DNA of 64,000 bases from Octopus sinensis. Taxonomy: Eukaryota. Below, piece after piece: positions 23,774 through 59,548 of the stretch. Location of the stretch: assembly GCF_006345805.1 (NCBI RefSeq), contig NC_043014.1:45322001-45386000 (forward strand), in the 5' to 3' direction. The notes below the pieces were generated by a model. It did no database searches, was not told the origin of the DNA, and saw only the letters and a program-made list of their open reading frames with translations. The position numbers and the translations under genes were made by a program. Numbering within the stretch: the first letter of the stretch is position 1; the number at the start of each line of letters is the position of its first letter.

Positions 23774-24256
23774 TTAAACTGGATGACAGAATAAGTCTAC
23801 CACCCAAATAGTTTCCTTCAGATGCCTCACAACCTCTGTGGCAGGCACTACAGTCTCATGCACTAAGATGTCATCTACATAGGAAGTGGTGGCCCTTCTT
23901 ATCCTATCCACCTTTCCCAGGATGGATTTGAGCACTGTCGCTATGATCTTTGGTGCAGACTTCAGCCCAAAAGCCAACCATGTCAAACAATATGTCCAGC
24001 TCTTGTATCGCACCAACTGATACTGCCACAGTTTGTCGCTCACATGGAGCTGGAAATATGCTGACTTCAAGTTGACGATCATTGCTGCCTTAGTTGACTG
24101 TCTCCATATGTGCAGCATCTCATCGCAGACGTCAGTGGCCTCACCACCTGTGTGGCACAATACATGTCCATTCATCCCCTGAAAGTCCAGTACCGGTCTG
24201 ACTTTCCCCTTGGTTGGCTGCACCACTGCCACTAGAGGTAGTACTCTGCTCACCAC
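23774..24256 (-). pseudogene. Gypsy reverse transcriptase fragment
   Basis: KVRPVLDF...LKSAYFQL...TYCLTWLAFGLKSAP...SYVDDILV. Confidence 0.9.
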
Positions 24257-24839
24257 CTCCTACTCCCATAGGATAAGAACACCTTCTTTAATCCACCTCT
24301 CTACTTCTTCTTCAAACTTGCTCTTAGCATGTCCTTTCAGGATATGCTGGTAGCAGCTCACCCTGTTCTTCAGTGTCAGAGGCTCCTCTTTCCAGCATCA
24401 CTTTATTGTCCACCGCTGACCATCAAACGCTGTCCAAAAATCCTTGTCTTCAATGGTGTAGAAAGTGCAGCTCCTTGTAGAGCTCTGCTTTCGCTCACAT
24501 CCCTGACTCACAGCACCAAATGAAACTATGTCTCCTCCAACACTGACGCCTCCAAAGTGATCGATCACCATTACCACATCAATCCCATCTACCATGTAGC
24601 TGATCGCGATCGCCTGCAGCCTTAGCATTATGCCTCGCACTGCTATCTCCACATTGCTCCTACCCTAGCATTTGATTTTGCTGCAATTTACCACCAAAAT
24701 ACTACTCATTCTTTTCCATTTTTTGTCACTTTTGGGGTCACAAGAGTCATCATGCAGTCCATGTCCATGAGGGCTGCACAACATGTTTCTGCCAAACTCG
24801 ACCTCAACTAGGGGCAGCAACTTTACCAACGCCTCTACT

Positions 24840-25310
24840 CATTCATGGGGGAAGTTTGAGAGGCAGCAACTTCCCCATAGCCTTTTCCCTGGCCACAATT
24901 TCAGGTAATATGCCCAGGCTGTTTGCACCGGTAGCAAACTGGTCTGGGCTCTGCGCAATCCCTGACACTTAAAACACTGGCCTGTGAACGGCCACTGTCG
25001 TTCCACAACAGGCCTCTTTTTGTCTTTCCCCGGCCGTTGCGGGCTTCTGCAGCCACCATCACCACTGCCTTCCACCCAGTGTTTTGTGTCAACATGCAAG
25101 CTTGAATGATGATTTCACTCATTGCCATTTTTTTACCACCTGGAAATTGCCGCAGTCGCACCGAAATGTCATCAGGAAAGCCATTCATGAGGGCCAGTCA
25201 CGCTACCTCCTCCAGTCCCTCTTCAGTGAGACCAGACAATACAACCAGCCTCTGTACCTCCACAGGATATTCGTCAACTTGTTCCCCCTGTCCATCTGAC
25301 TGTTCCCAGC
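24840..25310 (-). pseudogene. Gypsy gag fragment with CCHC zinc knuckle
   Basis: GEQVDEY..EVQRLV.LSG...*LALMNGFPDDISVRLRQ and CYRCKQPGHI; frameshifts and stops present. Confidence 0.7.
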
Positions 25311-37920: not shown

Positions 37921-38337
37921 TATTTCTTTACTACCCACAAGGGGCTAAACACAGAGGGGACAAACAAGGACAGACACATGGATTAAGTCGATTACATCGA
38001 CCCCAGTGCGTAACTGGTACTTAATTTATCGACCCTGAAAGGATGAAAGGCAAAGTCGACCTCAGTGGAATTTGAACTCAGAACGTAACGGCAGACGAAA
38101 TACCTATTTCTTTACTACTCACAAGGGGCTAAACACAGAGGGGACAAACAAGGACAGACAAAGGGATTTCAGTCGATTACATTGACCCCAGTGCGTAACT
38201 GGTACTTAATTTATCGACCCCGAAAGGATGAAAGGCAAAGTCGACCTCAGCGGAATTTGAACTCAGAACGTAATGGCAGACGAAATACGGTTACGCATTT
38301 CGCCCGGTGTGCTAACGATTCTGCCAGCTCGCCGCCA
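37921..38337 (-). mobile_element. SINE family B (tail type 1) with a ~184-bp internal tandem duplication (dimer-like)
   Basis: Two head-to-tail units; 16-bp direct repeat ATGTGCTATAAATACC at 37905-37920 and 38338-38353. Confidence 0.92.
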
Positions 38338-40766: not shown

Positions 40767-41189
40767 GGATCTTTTCCTTTTGAACGGCAGTTTGTAACAT
40801 AATTTCTAGGTAACTAAAAAGTTTTAAACTTCGTATACTGGTAGAATGTGTTTATAAAATATCATTTTCTCTTGGTAGTATTGAGAAAATTCTAAAGTTT
40901 GTAAGATATTTCGTCTGAAAATCCGAGCATTTCGGCAATTTTAACCAATCGACTACCTCCATTTAACTAAAATTATTTGCTGCGTCTAAAACTGAGACAT
41001 CCTGTAACTAACCCTAAACCTCCTCCTAACCCTAACCCTAAATGTTTTTTTCTTAATTGTTAAATTAATTTATTTTCCATTGCTTTAGTTTTTTTTTACA
41101 CGTGTAACAATTAAGAAAAAAAAATTTAGGGTTAGTTACAAAGTGTTTAGTTAACTAGAAATTGTCTGCCGTTCAAAAGGAAAAGATCC
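40767..41189. mobile_element. Merlin-like non-autonomous DNA transposon, variant subfamily
   Basis: TIR GGATCTTTTCCTTTTGAACGGCAG at both ends; 8-bp TSD GAAAACTA (40759-40766, 41190-41197). Confidence 0.85.
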
Positions 41190-42167: not shown

Positions 42168-42415
42168 GTCTATAACAATGTGTTTGGGCAAACAATCCAC
42201 ATAAAAACGACTAAAACCAAGAACCGAGGCGCGGACAGAAGCACATTAGCGATAGAATGGAGGCTGAAAGGCTCATGTCTTTGGAAATGAGAAGACATAA
42301 CTACAAAACTTCATCGCCATGAGCAACATCTTGTACAGTGCATTGATGGTAGACCATAAAAAATATCTTACGAGATAGCGAGAAAAAAAACTGACGTCTT
42401 TAACCGTGAGCTTTC

Positions 42416-42645
42416 AATACCTATTTCTTTATTACCCACAAGGGGCTAAACATAGAGGCGACAAACAAGGACAGACATAGGTATTAAGTCGATTACATCG
42501 ACCCCAGTGCGTAACTGGTACTTAATTTATCGACCCCAAAAGGACGAAAGGCAAAGTCGACCTCGGCGGAATTTGAACTCACAACGTAGCGACAGACAAA
42601 ATACGGCTACGCATTTCGCCCGGCGTGCTAACGTTTCTGCCACCG
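42416..42645 (-). mobile_element. SINE family B (tail type 1)
   Basis: Aligns to 38100-38337. Confidence 0.88.
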
Positions 42646-46149: not shown

Positions 46150-46350
46150 ATATAATCTATAATAAAATAATCAAATCTATGTGTAATTGCAAAATGCTTA
46201 GCGGCATTTCGTCCGTCTTTACGTTCTGAGTTGAAATTCCGCCGAGGTTGACTTTGCCTTTCATTCTTTTGAGGCTGATAAGATAAGTACCAGTTCGAGC
46301 ATTGGAGCTGATGTAATCGAATCATTCCTGCTCCGAAATTGCTGGCCTTG
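46150..46350 (+). mobile_element. SINE family B (tail type 2); 3' part duplicated at 46894
   Basis: GAGTTGAAATTCC B-box, core and GCTGGCCTTGTGCCAA tail. Confidence 0.75.
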
Positions 46351-46484
46351 TGCCAATCATATGTGTAGATGCTTAAAGGCGGACGTTCGGAAAAGCAGTC
46401 ACGAATAAAATGGAATTGCTTTTTTTGTTTCAGAACTTTTTGACAGTTTATAGCATCCCACATTGCAAAAACATATATAAATTG

Positions 46485-46893
46485 GGATCTTTTCGGTTTG
46501 AACGGCATTTAAAAAAAATAATTTCCACGTAACTAAACACTTTTAAACTTCGTATACTGGTAGAATGTGTTTATAAAACATCTTTTTTCTCTTGGCTTTA
46601 TTGACAAAATTCTATGGTTTGTAAGATATTTGATGTTTTTTTCTTCAATTTCTGCAATTTCAACCAATCACTGACGTCTATTGAGGTAAAAAAAAACATT
46701 CAGTGCCGTACGAATATGTCCCTCGTTTAAGAAACAGATTGGGTTTATTTACATTTGTGAAGAAAAAAAGATACCCTTCCCCCCACCCCTAAAATAGATT
46801 GAAATGCAATAGATCGATTGTAGGATCATAATTATGGGTGACAATTTCATATGACACCGCTAGAAAAAACTGCCGTTCAAACCGAAAAGATTC
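46485..46893 (-). mobile_element. Merlin-like non-autonomous DNA transposon
   Basis: GGATCTTTTCGGTTTGAACGGCA...TGCCGTTCAAACCGAAAAGATTC; no 8-bp TSD, but flanked by a 234-bp direct duplication. Confidence 0.88.
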
Positions 46894-47113
46894 ACTTTGC
46901 CTTTCATCCTCTTGAGGTTGATAAAATAAGTACCAGTCGAGCATTGGAGTTGATGTAATCGACTCATCCCTGCTCCGAAATTGATGGCCTTGTGCCAATA
47001 TATGTGTAAATGTTTAAGGCGGACGTTCGGAAAAGCTGTCACGAATAAAATGGAATTTCTTTTTTTGTTTCAGAACTTTTCGACAGTTTATAGTATCCCA
47101 CATTGCAAAACAT

Positions 47114-47810
47114 GGATCTTTTCGGCCACACTTTTGGTGGAGGCACGGTCGACAAAATAATACCAGTAATATTCGAAGGTATATTACATAGGTTAAACCA
47201 TTACCACGGCGAAATTTAACATTATACTGAGTCAACAACAAAAAAACAACGGCAAAATATTGAACGTGTATCAATATATTTTTTCTGAAAGTTTTTATGG
47301 TTAAGCTTGCGTAGATGTGTCGGAACCTCTGTATTTAAGTAGTACTGAAATTTTTTACTGGCGTTAAAGTTGTGGCTTTGCAAGCTTGTCCATTCATGGA
47401 CCTTTTCAGTTTGAACGGCAGTTTTTTCTAGAGGTGTCATATGAAATTGTCACCCATAATTATGACCCTAGAATCGATCTATTGCATTTCAATCTGTTTT
47501 AGGGTTAGGGGTAGGGGAAAGGGTATCTTTTTTTCTTCACAAATGTAAATAAACCCAATCTGTTTCTTAAACGAGGGACATATTCATACAGCACAGAATG
47601 TTTTCACCTCAATTAGACGTCATTGATTGGTTGAAATTGCAGAAATTGAAGAAAAAAAAACAACAAATATCTTACAAAGTATAGAATTTTCTCAATAAAG
47701 CCAAGAGAAAAAGATGTTTTATAAACACATTCTACCAGTATACGAAGTTTAAAAGTGTTTAGTTACGCGGAAATTATTTTTAAAAACCGCCGTTCAAACC
47801 GAAAAGATCC
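47114..47810 (+). mobile_element. Composite Merlin-like element: 12-bp TIR stub + ~270 bp captured DNA + full unit (47398-47810)
   Basis: 8-bp TSD CAAAACAT at 47106-47113 and 47811-47818; captured part aligns to 56144-56406. Confidence 0.88.
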
Positions 47811-48430
47811 CAAAACATTTATAAATCGCGTTTTATTTTTTTAATACTTTCAAATCTGTCTTCTTCAAATGTTTCACCATTTCTTGTTCGCCCACCATGT
47901 TTGAATATGAATGTGTGAACATAAATGAGATTCGCCGGTCAATTTTTTTCTTTGCAATTTCTCTTGGTAATTTGTTGAATTGTCTAGGAAGTGGATTTTG
48001 GAAACACGCGTTGGGATCGGCAACAATAAAATATAGGCATGCAACCACATACTTATGTAATAAACTTACACACACACAACCACATTCTACTTTATTTTTT
48101 AAGCTCACTCCCCACTCAAAACTTTTGACTTTTATTCCCATTATGAACAAGTTTTCGAAGGAAGGGCATGGCTACTGACTGCTTTTTTTTTTTCGTCACT
48201 GAACGAAGTGGGTTCTGTTTAAAATATTAACTATATTCCATTCCCAGATAAGACATGTTTAATGGAAGATTTATAGGGAATGAGGGAAATGTTACCAGCA
48301 TGTTTCAGAAGTGATATCAAACAAGTTCGAAAACAGAAAACAAAAATATTTAAATCAGGTTATCACTAGTACATCAGACTTGTATAGTTTTGCTACTTTT
48401 TTGTTTTTTAGTAGGTTTGTCAATCTAGAT

Positions 48431-55924: not shown

Positions 55925-55983
55925 AAAGTGTTTAGTTACGTGGAAATTATTTTAAAAAACTGCCGTTCAAACCGAAAGGATTC
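55925..55983 (+). mobile_element. Isolated right end of the Merlin-like element
   Basis: GTGTTTAGTTACGTGGAAATT...CTGCCGTTCAAACCGAAAGGATTC. Confidence 0.8.
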
Positions 55984-56406
55984 AAATGGAGAATAATAGG
56001 TGGTTGGTTCATCAACTTTTAGACACTATATTATGTTAACTTATTTATTTATTTACTAAACTGATAATTACAATAACATACATACATATAACATTATTCT
56101 TTACATATAAGATATAAGATATCACGCTCGGACAACTTAGCTGGCCACACTTTTGGTGGAGGGAGGGTCGACAAAATAATACCAGTAATACTCGAAGGTA
56201 TATTACATAGGACAAACCATTACCACAGCGAAATTTAACATTATACTGAGTAGAAAAAATATTTTTAAAAAACAACTATTGAACGTGTATGAATATATTT
56301 TCCTGAAAGGGTTACGTAGATGCGTCGGGACCTCTGTATTTAAAAGTAGTACCGAATTTTTTTACTGGCGTTAAAGTTGTGACTTTGCAAGCTTGTTAGA
56401 ATCCAT

Positions 56407-57002
56407 GGATCTTTTCGGTTTGAACGGCAGTTTTTTCTAGCGGTGTCATATGAAATTGTCACCCATAATTATGACCCTAGTATCGATCTATTGCATTTCA
56501 ATCTCTTTTAGGGTTAGGGGTGAGGGGAAGGATATCTTTTTTTTCTCCACAAATGTAAATAAACCCAATCTGTTTCTTAAACGAGGGACATATCCATACG
56601 GCACAGAATGTTTTTTTTTTTTTACCTCAATAGACGTCAGTGATTGGTTGAAATTGCAGAAATTGAAGAAAAAACAACAACAAATATCTTACAAAGTATA
56701 GAATTTTCTCAATAAAGCCAAGAGAAAAAGATGTTTTATAAACACATTCTACCAGTATGCGAAGTTTAAAATTTTTTAATTACGTGGAAATTATTTTTAA
56801 AAAACTGCCGTTCAAACCGAAAAGATCCAGCTATCTTTATTTGCAATAATTTGTGAATATACAACTATATCCTATAATGGTTTATAATGTTTTATAAACA
56901 CATTCTACCAGTATACGAAGTTTAAAGGGCAATCTTTCTTTAAAATTTTTTAGTTACGTGGAAATTATTTTTAAAAAACTGCCGTTCAAACCGAAAAGAT
57001 CC
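56407..57002 (+). mobile_element. Composite Merlin-like element: full unit (56407-56828) + ~60 bp spacer + second right end (~56888-57002)
   Basis: 8-bp TSD GAATCCAT at 56399-56406 and 57003-57010 flanks the composite, not the inner unit. Confidence 0.88.
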
Positions 57003-57126
57003 GAATCCATTATTATATTTTTTTCAAATGTCGAACACATCAAAATATAAACATAAACACACACACACACACATACATTAAAAGTGAAACTTAAATAGGA
57101 ATTAAATAAAATTAAAAAAGTCTTGC

Positions 57127-57280
57127 CTTTACGTAATTTGAGAAGGTTTGTAAAATACATAGCTCCAAACTGGATAATGCTTTGGGGTTGAGACCGAAGT
57201 ACTTCGCGGGCAAAACCTTCCAGTAATGCCTCAAACCCTACCGGTACTCGGAGTTTCGTGTTAGAAAATGGTACAGACAT
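57127..57280 (-). CDS. SPA17: First coding exon of sperm surface protein Sp17-like RIIa (PKA-RII dimerisation/docking) domain protein
   Basis: MSVPFSNTKLRVPVGFEALLEGFAREVLRSQPQSIIQFGAMYFTNLLKLRK closely resembles the SPA17 N-terminus (recalled human MSIPFSNTHYRIPQGFGNLLEGLTREILREQP); acceptor TTTATCAG 7 nt upstream of the ATG; donor either AG|GCAAGA (exon end 57127) or AC|GTAAAG (end 57133); later exons not identified. Confidence 0.88.
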
Positions 57281-57486: not shown

Positions 57487-57816
57487 TGGATCGCTGAAAA
57501 CCGGATTAGCAGAATTAAATAAACGAACGTTACTAATCAAGCTCACTCACTCTATATCTGTTATTCTCGGTTATCGACAAAGAAATAAATATTAAAAAAA
57601 AACTGTCAGCCATTTTTTTTCTGTAACCGATCTGGCTTTTTTATTGAGCAGATGTTTGGATCAGAAGCGGTCCAGTCGTGACCATCCAATTTATTTTTCG
57701 GACATAGTGTATTTAGAGCAATATTGCTTAACGTATTCTTGTTATTTTTAAAGTTGTTTTTTTTAAATAACAGTATATGATTTAAGGGAGATTTAGCCAT
57801 TATTTCTAATTTCCTG

Positions 57817-58232
57817 GGATCTTTTCGGTTTGAACAGCAGTTTTTTAAAATAATTTCCACGTAACTAAACACTTTTAAACTTCGTATACTGGTAGAATGT
57901 GTTTATAAAACATCTTTTTCTCTTGGCTTTATTGAGAAAATTCTATAGTTTGTAAGATATTTGTTGTTGTTTTTTCTTCAATTTCTGCAATTTCAATCAA
58001 TCACTGACGTCTATTGAGGTAAAAAAAAAACATTCTATGCCGTATGAATATGTCCCTCGTTTAAGAAACAGATTGGGTTTATTTACATTTGTGAAGAAAA
58101 AAGATACCCTTCCCCCCACCCCTAACCCTAAAACAGATTGAAATGCAATAGATCGATACTAGGGTCATAATTATAGGTGACAATTTCATATGACACCGCT
58201 AGAAAAAACTGCCGTTCAAACCGAAAAGATCC
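57817..58232 (-). mobile_element. Merlin-like non-autonomous DNA transposon
   Basis: Both TIRs present; opposite orientation to 56407-56828; flanked by a 96/93-bp direct duplication. Confidence 0.9.
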
Positions 58233-58238
58233 ATATTT

Positions 58239-58381
58239 ATTTCTTTACTACCCACAAGGGGACAAACAAGGACAGACAAACGGATTAAGTCGATTACATC
58301 GACCCCAGTGCGTATTTGGTACTTAATTTATCGACCCCGAAAGGATGAAAGGCAAAGTCGACCTTGGCGGAATTTGAACTC
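58239..58381 (-). mobile_element. 5'-truncated SINE family B (tail type 1) inserted at the transposon end
   Basis: Core and tail align to 38100-38260; AAAAGATCCATATT is repeated on both sides. Confidence 0.8.
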
Positions 58382-58650
58382 ATCCATATTGTTTAAAAGA
58401 TCCATATTGTTTAATGTATTCTTGTTACTTTTAAATTTTTTTTTAGATAACAGTATATGATTTGAGGGAGATTTAGCCATTATTTCTAATTTCCTGGACT
58501 AATTCACAAAGAAATGAGAAATTTAATGTATTAAGAATTTATCTCATTTATTGATTTCTTTTGATATGGTATACGGAATTTTGTTGTGGGACGAAAAGAT
58601 TGAACTGAGTGGCAGAAAGACCAATTGTTGCTTGGTCCCAAAGTCAGCTG

Positions 58651-58860
58651 GGATCTTTTCGCTTTGAACGGCAGATTTTTAAAATAATTTCTTTGTAACT
58701 AAACACTTTTAAACTTTGTATACTGGTAGAATGTGTTACATAAAACAACTTTTTCTCTTGGCTTTCTTGAGAAAATTCTGTAGTGTGTAAGCTATTTATT
58801 GTTTAATTTCTTGCATTTCAGCAATTTCAACCAATCAATGATGTCTATTGAGGCGAATAC
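58651..58860 (-). mobile_element. Truncated older Merlin-like copy (one TIR)
   Basis: GGATCTTTTCGCTTTGAACGGCAG, then diverged internal sequence. Confidence 0.8.
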
Positions 58861-59186: not shown

Positions 59187-59548
59187 CAGTGCTTTTCAAA
59201 CTTTTTGCTGGAGCGGAACCCCAAGGAAACATTCCACTGGCTCGAGGAACCCCTGTGCAATAATTTAATAGTCTTATGCACACATATCTGCACAGGTGAA
59301 TTAAAAATTACTGCCAATTTTAGCAGTTTTGTAACTTCTTGCGGAACCCCCCCTGGACTGTACTGGCAGAACCCTAAGGTTCTGCGGAACCCCTGTGCAA
59401 TAATTTAATAGTCTTATGCACACATATCTGCACAGGTGAATTAAAAATTACTGCCAATTTTAGCAGTTTTGTAACTTCTTGCGGAACCCCCCCTGGACTG
59501 TACTGGCAGAACCCTAAGGTTCTGCGGAACCCTGGTTGAAAACCACTG
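59187..59548 (-). mobile_element. hAT MITE with a perfect 140-bp internal tandem duplication
   Basis: TSD GTTTAGGG on both sides; 59247-59386 identical to 59387-59526. Confidence 0.93.

What the first reader, a model, noticed from the sequence alone, without database searches (positions are those of the whole stretch)
47106..47818. Pack-type composite transposon: a 12-bp TIR stub plus a full unit moved ~270 bp of neighbouring DNA
Seen: GGATCTTTTCGG (47114) fuses via GG(CC) microhomology to a ~270-bp segment. That segment matches the DNA directly left of the 56407 element (56144-56406), including a remnant of its TSD (CCATTCAT vs GAATCCAT). It is followed by a full unit. The perfect TSD CAAAACAT flanks the whole composite, whereas the inner unit has no TSD. 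Known: Pack-MULE/Pack-CACTA/hAT capture is well described in plants; I know no report for Merlin-like elements in molluscs. Inference: donor at ~56.1-56.8 kb (presumed SPA17 intron), with a ~9-kb local hop; a 12-bp end was apparently sufficient for transposition.
Basis: partly seen in the sequence, partly recalled or inferred. Interest (0 to 1): 0.8.

Follow-up and report, generated by a model that had tools for sequence, protein, structure and literature searches.

The report
Chimeric MITE that copied a neighbour's flank
One copy of a small non-autonomous DNA transposon carries 272 bp copied from the DNA beside a sister copy 9 kb away; this is real, but it looks like a one-off repair accident of a kind already described in animals, and nothing shows that a 12-bp transposon end can move DNA.

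Summary
A perfect 8-bp duplication, CAAAACAT (47106-13 and 47811-18), encloses three parts:
- a 12-bp terminal stub, GGATCTTTTCGG;
- 272 bp that occur only once more in the window, directly left of the unit at 56407;
- a full 413-bp unit.

Homology to 56143-56828 begins at a shared GG and ends at the last base of the right terminal repeat. A nearby paralogous segment (46250-46484) reads through the same site uninterrupted, so this is a true insertion site.

- The 56-kb locus has no stub beside the cargo source.
- Repeat positions 13-24, which the stub lacks, are the best conserved part of the family.
- Only one copy of the composite can be seen.

The most likely origin is that an ordinary unit inserted at 47106 and later broke or excised. 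Tan et al. 2021 report this as the usual origin of single-copy animal Pack-TIRs. A two-end "composite insertion" is the main rival.

The source genome is in none of the collections, so genome-wide copy number could not be tested. I rate it a new member of a known kind, of modest interest.

The parts
47106..47113 (+). Left copy of the 8-bp target-site duplication, CAAAACAT
   Evidence: The paralogous uninterrupted site in D1 reads CAAAAACAT once.
47114..47125 (+). Terminal stub GGATCTTTTCGG, positions 1-12 of the 30-bp terminal repeat. Its last GG (47124-25) is shared with the donor (56143-44), so this is the 2-bp junction microhomology.
47126..47397 (+). Cargo: a 272-bp copy of the DNA directly left of the 56407 unit, ending in the diverged copy (CCATTCAT) of that unit's TSD
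47398..47810 (+). Full inner unit (413 bp). Its left repeat carries two changes (GGACCTTTTCAG); its right repeat is intact.
47811..47818 (+). Right copy of the TSD, CAAAACAT
56145..56406 (+). Source of the cargo: native left flank of the 56407 element, including its TSD GAATCCAT (56399-56406). No transposon stub lies to its left.
56407..56828 (+). Source unit (422 bp, perfect 30-bp terminal repeats)
56829..57010 (+). Rest of the donor element: 58-bp filler of unknown origin (56829-86), a re-copied right end (56887-57002, unit positions ~325-422 with an 18-bp insert), and the right TSD GAATCCAT (57003-10)
46250..46484 (+). D1: paralogue of the composite's insertion region. It serves as an in-window empty site, reading ...ACATTGCAAAAACATATATAAATTG without interruption.
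46894..47113 (+). D2: the duplicated segment into which the composite is inserted. It continues at 47819-47828 (TTATAAATCG).

Best explanation
This is a single chimeric copy of a ~420-bp Merlin-like non-autonomous transposon (MITE), and it was most likely made where it now sits.

Proposed steps:
1. An ordinary unit inserted at CAAAACAT (47106), producing the 8-bp duplication.
2. That copy was later broken near its left end, or excised and re-synthesised from the sister chromatid.
3. The right-hand broken end used the homologous unit at 56407, 9.3 kb away on the same DNA, as repair template.
4. Synthesis ran leftwards through that unit, out of its left end, and 262-272 bp into its private flank.
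5. The new strand was then released and joined to the 10-12 bp that remained of the left terminus through a 2-bp GG microhomology.

The result is transposon termini enclosing captured host DNA, that is, a Pack-TIR by structure. It has no demonstrated mobility, and the stub never had to act as a transposition end.

Shown: the anatomy, the TSD, the empty-site paralogue, the direction of copying, and the absence of a stub at the donor.
Inferred: the existence of a plain precursor unit at 47106 and the repair pathway.
For: - Perfect TSD plus an uninterrupted paralogous site (D1) prove a bona fide insertion site.
- Homology to the donor starts at a 2-bp microhomology and then runs without a second visible junction to the right terminus. 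This is expected if the far side was resolved by homology inside the unit.
- The donor keeps cargo and unit and has no stub.
- Cargo and unit divergence are statistically compatible with one copying event: 7.6% versus 4.4%, Fisher p=0.12.
- The cargo has only two copies in the window.
- Terminal-repeat positions 13-24, absent from the stub, are the most conserved part of the family.
- Published animal Pack-TIRs are mostly single-copy and made by transposition-independent gap filling. 57% lie within 15 kb of the parental copy, and median microhomology is 2 bp (PMC8277862). This case fits all three.
- Sibling copies in the same 12 kb carry other local-duplication scars. Breakage and mis-repair at ends of this family therefore look recurrent here.
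Against: - No allele or orthologue with a plain unit at 47106 was available, so the precursor is hypothetical.
- The unit sequence shows no clear mosaic and only one derived site shared with the 56-kb unit. Nothing in the unit itself proves it came from that copy.
- The breakpoint is 10-12 bp from the terminus, whereas Tan et al. report breakpoints skewed towards element interiors.
- The cargo is somewhat more diverged than the unit, though not significantly.
- Genome-wide copy number is unknown.
Confidence: 0.5

Rival explanations
1. Composite insertion by alternative (two-end) transposition with re-replication, as described for maize Ac/fAc. The right terminus of the 56407 unit, together with a second full terminus, inserted at 47106 ahead of a replication fork. 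The second terminus could be the unit's own left end on the sister chromatid, or the facing end at 57817. The unit and its distal flank were re-replicated for ~685 bp on one side and only 10-12 bp on the other. The forks aborted and the two ends were joined by 2-bp microhomology. In this reading the ~9-kb hop is real, but full terminal repeats performed it and the stub is a truncation product.
For: - Published composite insertions consist of transposon termini plus their flanking DNA. They are joined internally at 0-4-bp microhomology, are flanked by 8-bp TSDs, insert nearby, and can leave the donor unchanged ('solo-CI'; PMC4270019).
- The cargo is exactly the flank distal to the terminus that would have been used.
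- Facing termini exist today at 56828 and 57817.
- Flank duplications with a MITE at the junction (46250-47828 and 57717-58496) resemble the tandem direct duplications made by the same process (PMC3744419).
Against: - Known composite insertions have kilobase-long arms on both sides. A 10-12-bp arm would need an almost immediate fork collapse or heavy resection.
- No ~9-kb tandem duplication between donor and target is present in the window, so only the rarer solo form would fit.
- The process is documented for Ac/Ds, not for Merlin or for animals.
Confidence: 0.22
2. A pre-formed Pack-type composite (12-bp left end + cargo + unit) arose at about 56.1 kb or elsewhere and was cut and pasted to 47106, with the 12-bp stub serving as a functional left end.
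For: - A perfect TSD flanks exactly stub...right terminus.
- The stub is a perfect match to the terminal 12 bp.
- Local reinsertion is typical of cut-and-paste elements.
- Multicopy Pack-TIRs do exist in animals, though only 4 of 281 unique cases (PMC8277862).
Against: - There is no stub beside the cargo source at 56132-56143, and the donor is still occupied. Extra unobserved steps are needed.
- Repeat positions 13-24 are under the strongest conservation in 13 real ends and are missing from the stub.
- Only one copy of the composite is in view.
- The same structure follows from known repair routes without this assumption.
Confidence: 0.1
3. The '270 bp + unit' block is an ordinary part of a longer repeat or segmental-duplication family that has further copies outside the window. 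In that case the 56-kb locus is not the actual donor, or the junctions are assembly artefacts in a repeat-dense region.
For: - The genome could not be searched.
- The region is saturated with repeats and local duplications.
- The two cargo copies differ by 7.6% plus 8 indels, so a closer third copy could exist.
Against: - The cargo/unit junction at 56406/56407 is a genuine insertion junction with its TSD partner at 57003-10 (p~3e-5 by chance). The cargo is therefore native flank there, not an internal element part.
- The cargo has only 2 copies in 64 kb, whereas the unit has 4 full and 5 partial or diverged copies.
- Copies differ by 4-8%, enough for unambiguous assembly.
Confidence: 0.1

Closest known systems
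Animal Pack-TIRs formed by transposition-independent gap filling (Tan et al. 2021, Nat Commun 12:4280, PMC8277862)
   Same: Non-transposon DNA lies between parts of one TIR element inside the element's TSD. The parental copy is identifiable in cis within 15 kb. The breakpoint has 2-bp microhomology. The composite is single-copy as far as can be seen.
   Different: - The filler is not just host DNA. It is the flank plus the body of a paralogous copy of the same element, so one junction is hidden in homology.
- The breakpoint is 10-12 bp from the terminus rather than internal.
- The family is Merlin-like, whereas the published set is 87% hAT and Tc/mariner, and Merlin is not named in that paper's main text.
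Composite Insertions from reversed-ends or alternative transposition with re-replication (Zhang et al. 2014, eLife 3:e03724, PMC4270019)
   Same: Termini at both ends, an 8-bp TSD, an internal NHEJ/MMEJ junction, a payload consisting of an element plus its own distal flank, a nearby target, and a donor that can remain intact.
   Different: - The size is ~0.7 kb rather than 5-23 kb.
- One arm is only 10-12 bp.
- No associated tandem duplication spans donor to target.
- The transposon superfamily and the kingdom differ.
Pack-MULE / Pack-CACTA / Pack-TYPE elements of plants
   Same: Terminal repeats plus TSD enclose captured genomic DNA.
   Different: - Those carry two recognisable terminal repeats and often gene fragments, are frequently captured in trans, and about a third are multicopy (as summarised in PMC8277862).
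- Here one end is a 12-bp stub, the cargo is intronic and non-coding, capture was in cis, and no second copy is seen.
Abortive gap repair / filler DNA and P-element replacement (Drosophila P, maize Ac to Ds). From my own knowledge; not re-read here.
   Same: After excision, synthesis-dependent repair with template switches produces internally rearranged elements that keep short termini and carry foreign filler joined at microhomologies. Ectopic copies in cis are preferred templates.
   Different: There is no experimental evidence for this family, and the cleavage chemistry of Merlin transposases is unknown.

Membership tests
Merlin superfamily (non-autonomous derivative) | Terminal inverted repeats of at least 24 bp beginning 5'-GG (PMC8101967) | tested here: met
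   The 30-bp repeat GGATCTTTTCGGTTTGAACGGCAGTTTTTT is perfect at both ends of 56407-56828.
Merlin superfamily (non-autonomous derivative) | 8- or 9-bp target-site duplication | tested here: met
   There are three perfect 8-bp pairs: CAAAACAT (47106/47811), GAATCCAT (56399/57003) and TAGTTTTC (around 40767-41189). An 8-bp TSD is also produced by hAT and P elements, so this feature is not exclusive.
Merlin superfamily (non-autonomous derivative) | Mobilised by a DDE_Tnp_IS1595 transposase encoded by an autonomous partner with the same termini | not testable with these tools
   The window holds no transposase ORF. The genome is absent from all searchable collections.
Pack-TIR (structural definition of Tan et al. 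2021) | Non-TE sequence flanked on both sides by sequence of one TIR element, with an identifiable parental copy of the captured segment | tested here: met
   The structure is stub (12 bp) + 272-bp cargo + unit. The parental copy is at 56145-56406. The cargo is not repeated otherwise in the window.
Mobile (multicopy) Pack element | Two or more copies of the same composite with different TSDs | not testable with these tools
   One copy is present in 64 kb. Cargo and terminal-repeat patterns gave 0 hits in the collections scanned: cargo pattern in metagenome contigs, terminal-repeat patterns in viral, metagenome and prokaryote contigs. The source genome is simply not there.
Mobile (multicopy) Pack element | Both ends competent for the transposase | tested here: inconclusive
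   The left end keeps only positions 1-12. Positions 13-24 are nearly invariant in 13 real ends (3 mismatches in 156) and 10/12 different in the stub. This argues against competence but is not a functional test.
Composite transposon (two complete elements bracketing cargo) | A complete element, or at least a complete end, on each side of the cargo | tested here: not met
   Only 12 bp lie on the left. No second element is adjacent to the cargo source either: the nearest, 55925-55983, is a right-end fragment 160 bp away that faces the cargo.
Composite Insertion (alternative transposition + re-replication) | TSD-flanked termini, each followed by its own element and flank, joined internally by NHEJ or HR | tested here: inconclusive
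   The right arm fits fully. The left arm is only 10-12 bp. No donor-to-target tandem duplication is present.

The most novel reading that the evidence does not exclude
The composite is one of several scars left by alternative (two-end) transposition of a Merlin-like MITE family in an animal genome. The others are two 100-240-bp flank duplications with a MITE exactly at the junction, and a unit with a doubled right end plus filler. On this reading, the 46-59 kb cluster would be a natural record of composite insertions and tandem direct duplications, products so far demonstrated mainly for maize Ac/Ds. It would also imply that a composite with a 12-bp end might still be mobilisable.
Probability: 0.2. 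Interest if true: 0.55.

Novelty: new member of a known kind. Interest (0 to 1): 0.3.

Why it matters
If the in-situ reading is right, this is a tidy textbook-style example. Donor, product and an internal empty-site control all lie within 12 kb. It shows how a DNA transposon acquires host DNA by mis-repair, and it extends animal Pack-TIRs to a Merlin-like MITE.

It does not change what is known about the requirements for transposition. It would matter more if genome-wide data showed many such composites or several copies of this one. That would point to a family unusually prone to shuffling intronic and possibly exonic DNA, here right next to the first exon of an RIIa/SPA17-like gene.

Tried and rejected
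1. Finding the source genome or relatives, all without success:
   - The RIIa exon peptide gave only 73-75% identical hits.
   - The cargo 22-mer and terminal-repeat patterns gave 0 hits in the collections scanned: cargo in metagenome contigs, terminal repeat in viral, metagenome and prokaryote-genome contigs.
   - A unit-derived ORF had no protein relatives.
   - Copy number and orthologous-site tests were therefore impossible, and the negative cargo scan is uninformative.
2. Source of the 58-bp filler and the 18-bp insert in the 56-kb element: only chance-level 9-15-nt matches in the window.
3. Mosaic or phylogenetic test of the inner unit:
   - Only one site is shared as a derived state with the 56-kb unit.
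   - The inner unit is equally distant (4.4%) from the units at 56407 and 57817.
   - The test has no resolving power.
4. Reverse direction of copying (47 kb to 56 kb), or a shared 'long family' origin: rejected. The left TSD copy at 56399-406 lies inside the shared block and matches 57003-10 at 8/8.
5. End-bypass or transduction from a pseudo-end at 56132-43: rejected. That sequence (GACAACTTAGCT) does not resemble the stub.
6. Simple unequal crossing-over between units: this cannot place a flank between a stub and a unit.
7. Rfam scan of the window: no hits. The cargo has no coding or RNA signal.
8. Mollusc or cephalopod origin: plausible (35% GC, SINE- and microsatellite-rich; Merlin is abundant in octopus per PMC8101967) but not verified.

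Full report
**What is in the sequence.**
- CAAAACAT (47106-13) is followed by GGATCTTTTCGG (47114-25).
- Next come 272 bp (47126-47397), then a 413-bp unit (47398-47810), then CAAAACAT again (47811-18).
- The block 47124-47810 aligns to 56143-56828. Similarity starts at a shared GG, runs through the 262-bp left flank of the 56407 unit and through that unit, and stops at the last base of its right terminal repeat.
- The outer flanks do not align.
- The exact 12-mer occurs eight times in the window, always at a unit terminus apart from the stub. An 8/8 flank match has a chance of about 3e-5 at this composition.
- The cargo has only these two copies in the 64 kb.
- The junction microhomology is GG only.

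**The element family.**
- The unit is about 420 bp with perfect 30-bp terminal inverted repeats, GGATCTTTTCGGTTTGAACGGCAGTTTTTT.
- Full copies lie at 46485-46893(-), 47398-47810(+), 56407-56828(+) and 57817-58232(-).
- Truncated copies lie at 58651-58853, 55925-55983 and 56887-57002.
- A diverged subfamily copy at 40767-41189 has a perfect TSD, TAGTTTTC.
- GG termini, a repeat of at least 24 bp and 8-bp TSDs match the published structural definition of Merlin (PMC8101967). The transposase link cannot be tested because the window holds no transposase.
- Across 13 genuine ends, repeat positions 13-24 carry 3 mismatches in 156 positions, against 10 in positions 1-12. They are unchanged even in the diverged subfamily, whose left half no longer aligns. 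The stub differs at 10 of those 12 positions.

**An internal empty-site control.**
- The 237 bp left of the composite, together with the 10 bp right of its TSD (46894-47113 + 47819-28, "D2"), are a 93%-identical duplicate of 46250-46484 ("D1").
- D1 reads ...ACATTGCAAAAACATATATAAATTG without interruption.
- D2 reads ...ACATTGCAAAACAT[composite]CAAAACATTTATAAATCG.
- So something with this family's ends did insert here with an 8-bp duplication, after the D duplication arose.

**Direction of copying.**
- The 56407 element carries GAATCCAT on its left (56399-406) and again at 57003-10.
- Between these lie the full unit, 58 bp of filler with no source in the window, and a second copy of the right end (56887-57002).
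- The left TSD copy therefore belongs to a real insertion junction, and 56145-56406 is native flank.
- The composite holds the homologous junction in diverged form (CCATTCAT|GGACC).
- The information therefore flowed from the 56-kb locus, or its ancestor, to 47 kb.
- Left of the cargo source there is no stub: 56132-43 reads GACAACTTAGCT.

**Age.**
- Substitution divergence is 7.6% for the cargo (19/251) and 4.4% for the unit (18/411). The difference is not significant (Fisher p=0.12).
- Other unit pairs differ by 3.4-5.9%, D1/D2 by 7.0%, and the 57.7/58.4-kb flank repeat by 7.2%.
- The inner unit is no closer to the 56407 unit than to the 57817 unit and shares one derived site with it. Only the cargo ties the two loci together.
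- The event is old, and the copies are too star-like for a mosaic test.

**Mechanism.** Three routes give this structure.
It needs a stub next to the cargo at the donor, which is absent. It also needs an end that lacks the best-conserved repeat positions, and a donor that was afterwards restored.
- (b) In-situ gap filling. A normal unit at 47106 breaks or is excised. The right-hand end copies the homologous unit 9.3 kb away, reads out of it into its flank, and is joined to the remaining 10-12 bp at a 2-bp microhomology. This takes one insertion plus one repair event.
  - It matches the survey of 100 animal genomes. Single-copy Pack-TIRs there arise mostly by transposition-independent gap filling, 57% lie within 15 kb of their parent, and microhomology has a median of 2 bp (PMC8277862).
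- (c) A composite insertion by two-end transposition with re-replication, as in maize. Such products are termini plus their own flanks, joined at 0-4-bp microhomology, flanked by 8-bp TSDs, inserted nearby, with the donor sometimes left intact (PMC4270019).
  - It fits the right arm exactly.
  - It requires a left arm of only 10-12 bp and the "solo" form, since no 9-kb duplication is present.

I rank (b) at about 0.5, (c) at about 0.2 and (a) at about 0.1. The remainder covers a third-locus origin or an artefact. In (b) and (c) the stub never acted as an end.

**Context that bears on this.** All four full units in the window are abnormal at one end.
- The composite itself.
- The doubled right end at 56.4-57.0 kb.
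- D1-MITE-D2 at 46.25-47.83 kb. The MITE's expected TSD partner (ATAAATTG versus ATAAATCG) lies at the far end of the duplicated flank.
- 57717-57816 / MITE / a 3'-truncated SINE-like fragment / 58400-58496, with ATTTCCTG at both flank ends.

Flank duplications with an element at the junction are a known product of alternative transposition (PMC3744419). Unequal recombination between allelic insertions would also give them. I could not decide between these. Either way, breakage and mis-repair at ends of this family seem to have been frequent in this region. That makes a one-off chimera unsurprising.

**Setting.**
- An RIIa-domain first coding exon lies on the minus strand. The Pfam RIIa match has E=1e-12. 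The ATG is at 57280 and the likely splice donor at 57132.
- The donor element begins about 120 bp into the following intron, so "SPA17-like intron" is reasonable.
- The taxon could not be confirmed. The best protein matches are 73-75% identical and unnamed or annelid.
- The composition and repeat content are cephalopod-like.
- Merlin elements are reported as abundant in Octopus bimaculoides and as largely cephalopod-restricted among molluscs (PMC8101967; PMC10294476).

**Verdict.** The label "Pack-type" is acceptable as a structural description. The claims of a hop of the composite and of 12-bp sufficiency are not supported. The phenomenon is known in animals. A Merlin-like example with donor and empty-site control in one window is a neat new member rather than a new kind.

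Noticed in passing
window 46250-47828: A 237-bp direct duplication (D1 46250-46484; D2 46894-47113 + 47819-47828; 7% substitutions) has a full MITE (46485-46893) exactly at the junction. The MITE's own 8-bp flank ATAAATTG recurs as ATAAATCG only at the far end of D2. This looks like a transposon-junction tandem duplication or an unequal crossover between two nearby insertions.
   Followed up: partly
window 57717-58496: The same pattern occurs a second time. A ~100-bp flank (57717-57816) is repeated at 58400-58496 (90% identical). The MITE 57817-58232 and a 3'-truncated SINE-like fragment (58233-58382) lie between the two copies. ATTTCCTG ends both flank copies.
   Followed up: partly
window 56407-57010: The donor element has two right ends: a full unit, 58 bp of filler with no detectable source in the window, then unit positions ~325-422 again with an 18-bp insert. 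The perfect TSD GAATCCAT encloses the whole.
   Followed up: partly
window 40767-41189: A diverged subfamily copy (right half ~81% identical, left half unalignable) has 22/24 conserved terminal-repeat bases and a perfect TSD, TAGTTTTC. It is the only structurally ordinary copy in the window.
   Followed up: yes
window 57133-57280 (minus strand): First coding exon of an RIIa-domain (SPA17-like) protein, MSVPFSNTKLRVPVGFEALLEGFAREVLRSQPQSIIQFGAMYFTNLLKL... (Pfam RIIa E=1e-12). The closest database proteins are only 73-75% identical, so the source species is not represented in the protein collection.
   Followed up: partly
window 23777-25197 (minus strand): Degraded retroelement with a reverse-transcriptase fragment (RVT_1, E=1.5e-5, below the Pfam cut-off) and a weak gag-type zinc knuckle.
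   Followed up: partly
window 59246-59532: A 147-bp stretch (59246-59392) recurs 100% identically 140 bp downstream (59386-59532), the two copies overlapping by 7 bp, inside a repeat that also occurs at 36.2, 42.0 and 48.5 kb. This is a very recent local duplication.
   Followed up: no
window-wide, e.g. 58233-58382, 42414-42581, 37921-38265, 46227-46328, 46894-46964: A SINE-like repeat is present in at least 12 copies. A second SINE-like family is seen in translation as ...GYSRRHLPKVPCSGTEPGTMWLVSKLL.... There are long CA/TA/CATA-type microsatellite tracts (49.4-50.2, 51.1-51.8, 53.9-54.4, 61.8-63.9 kb). Rfam gave no hit at gathering thresholds.
   Followed up: no
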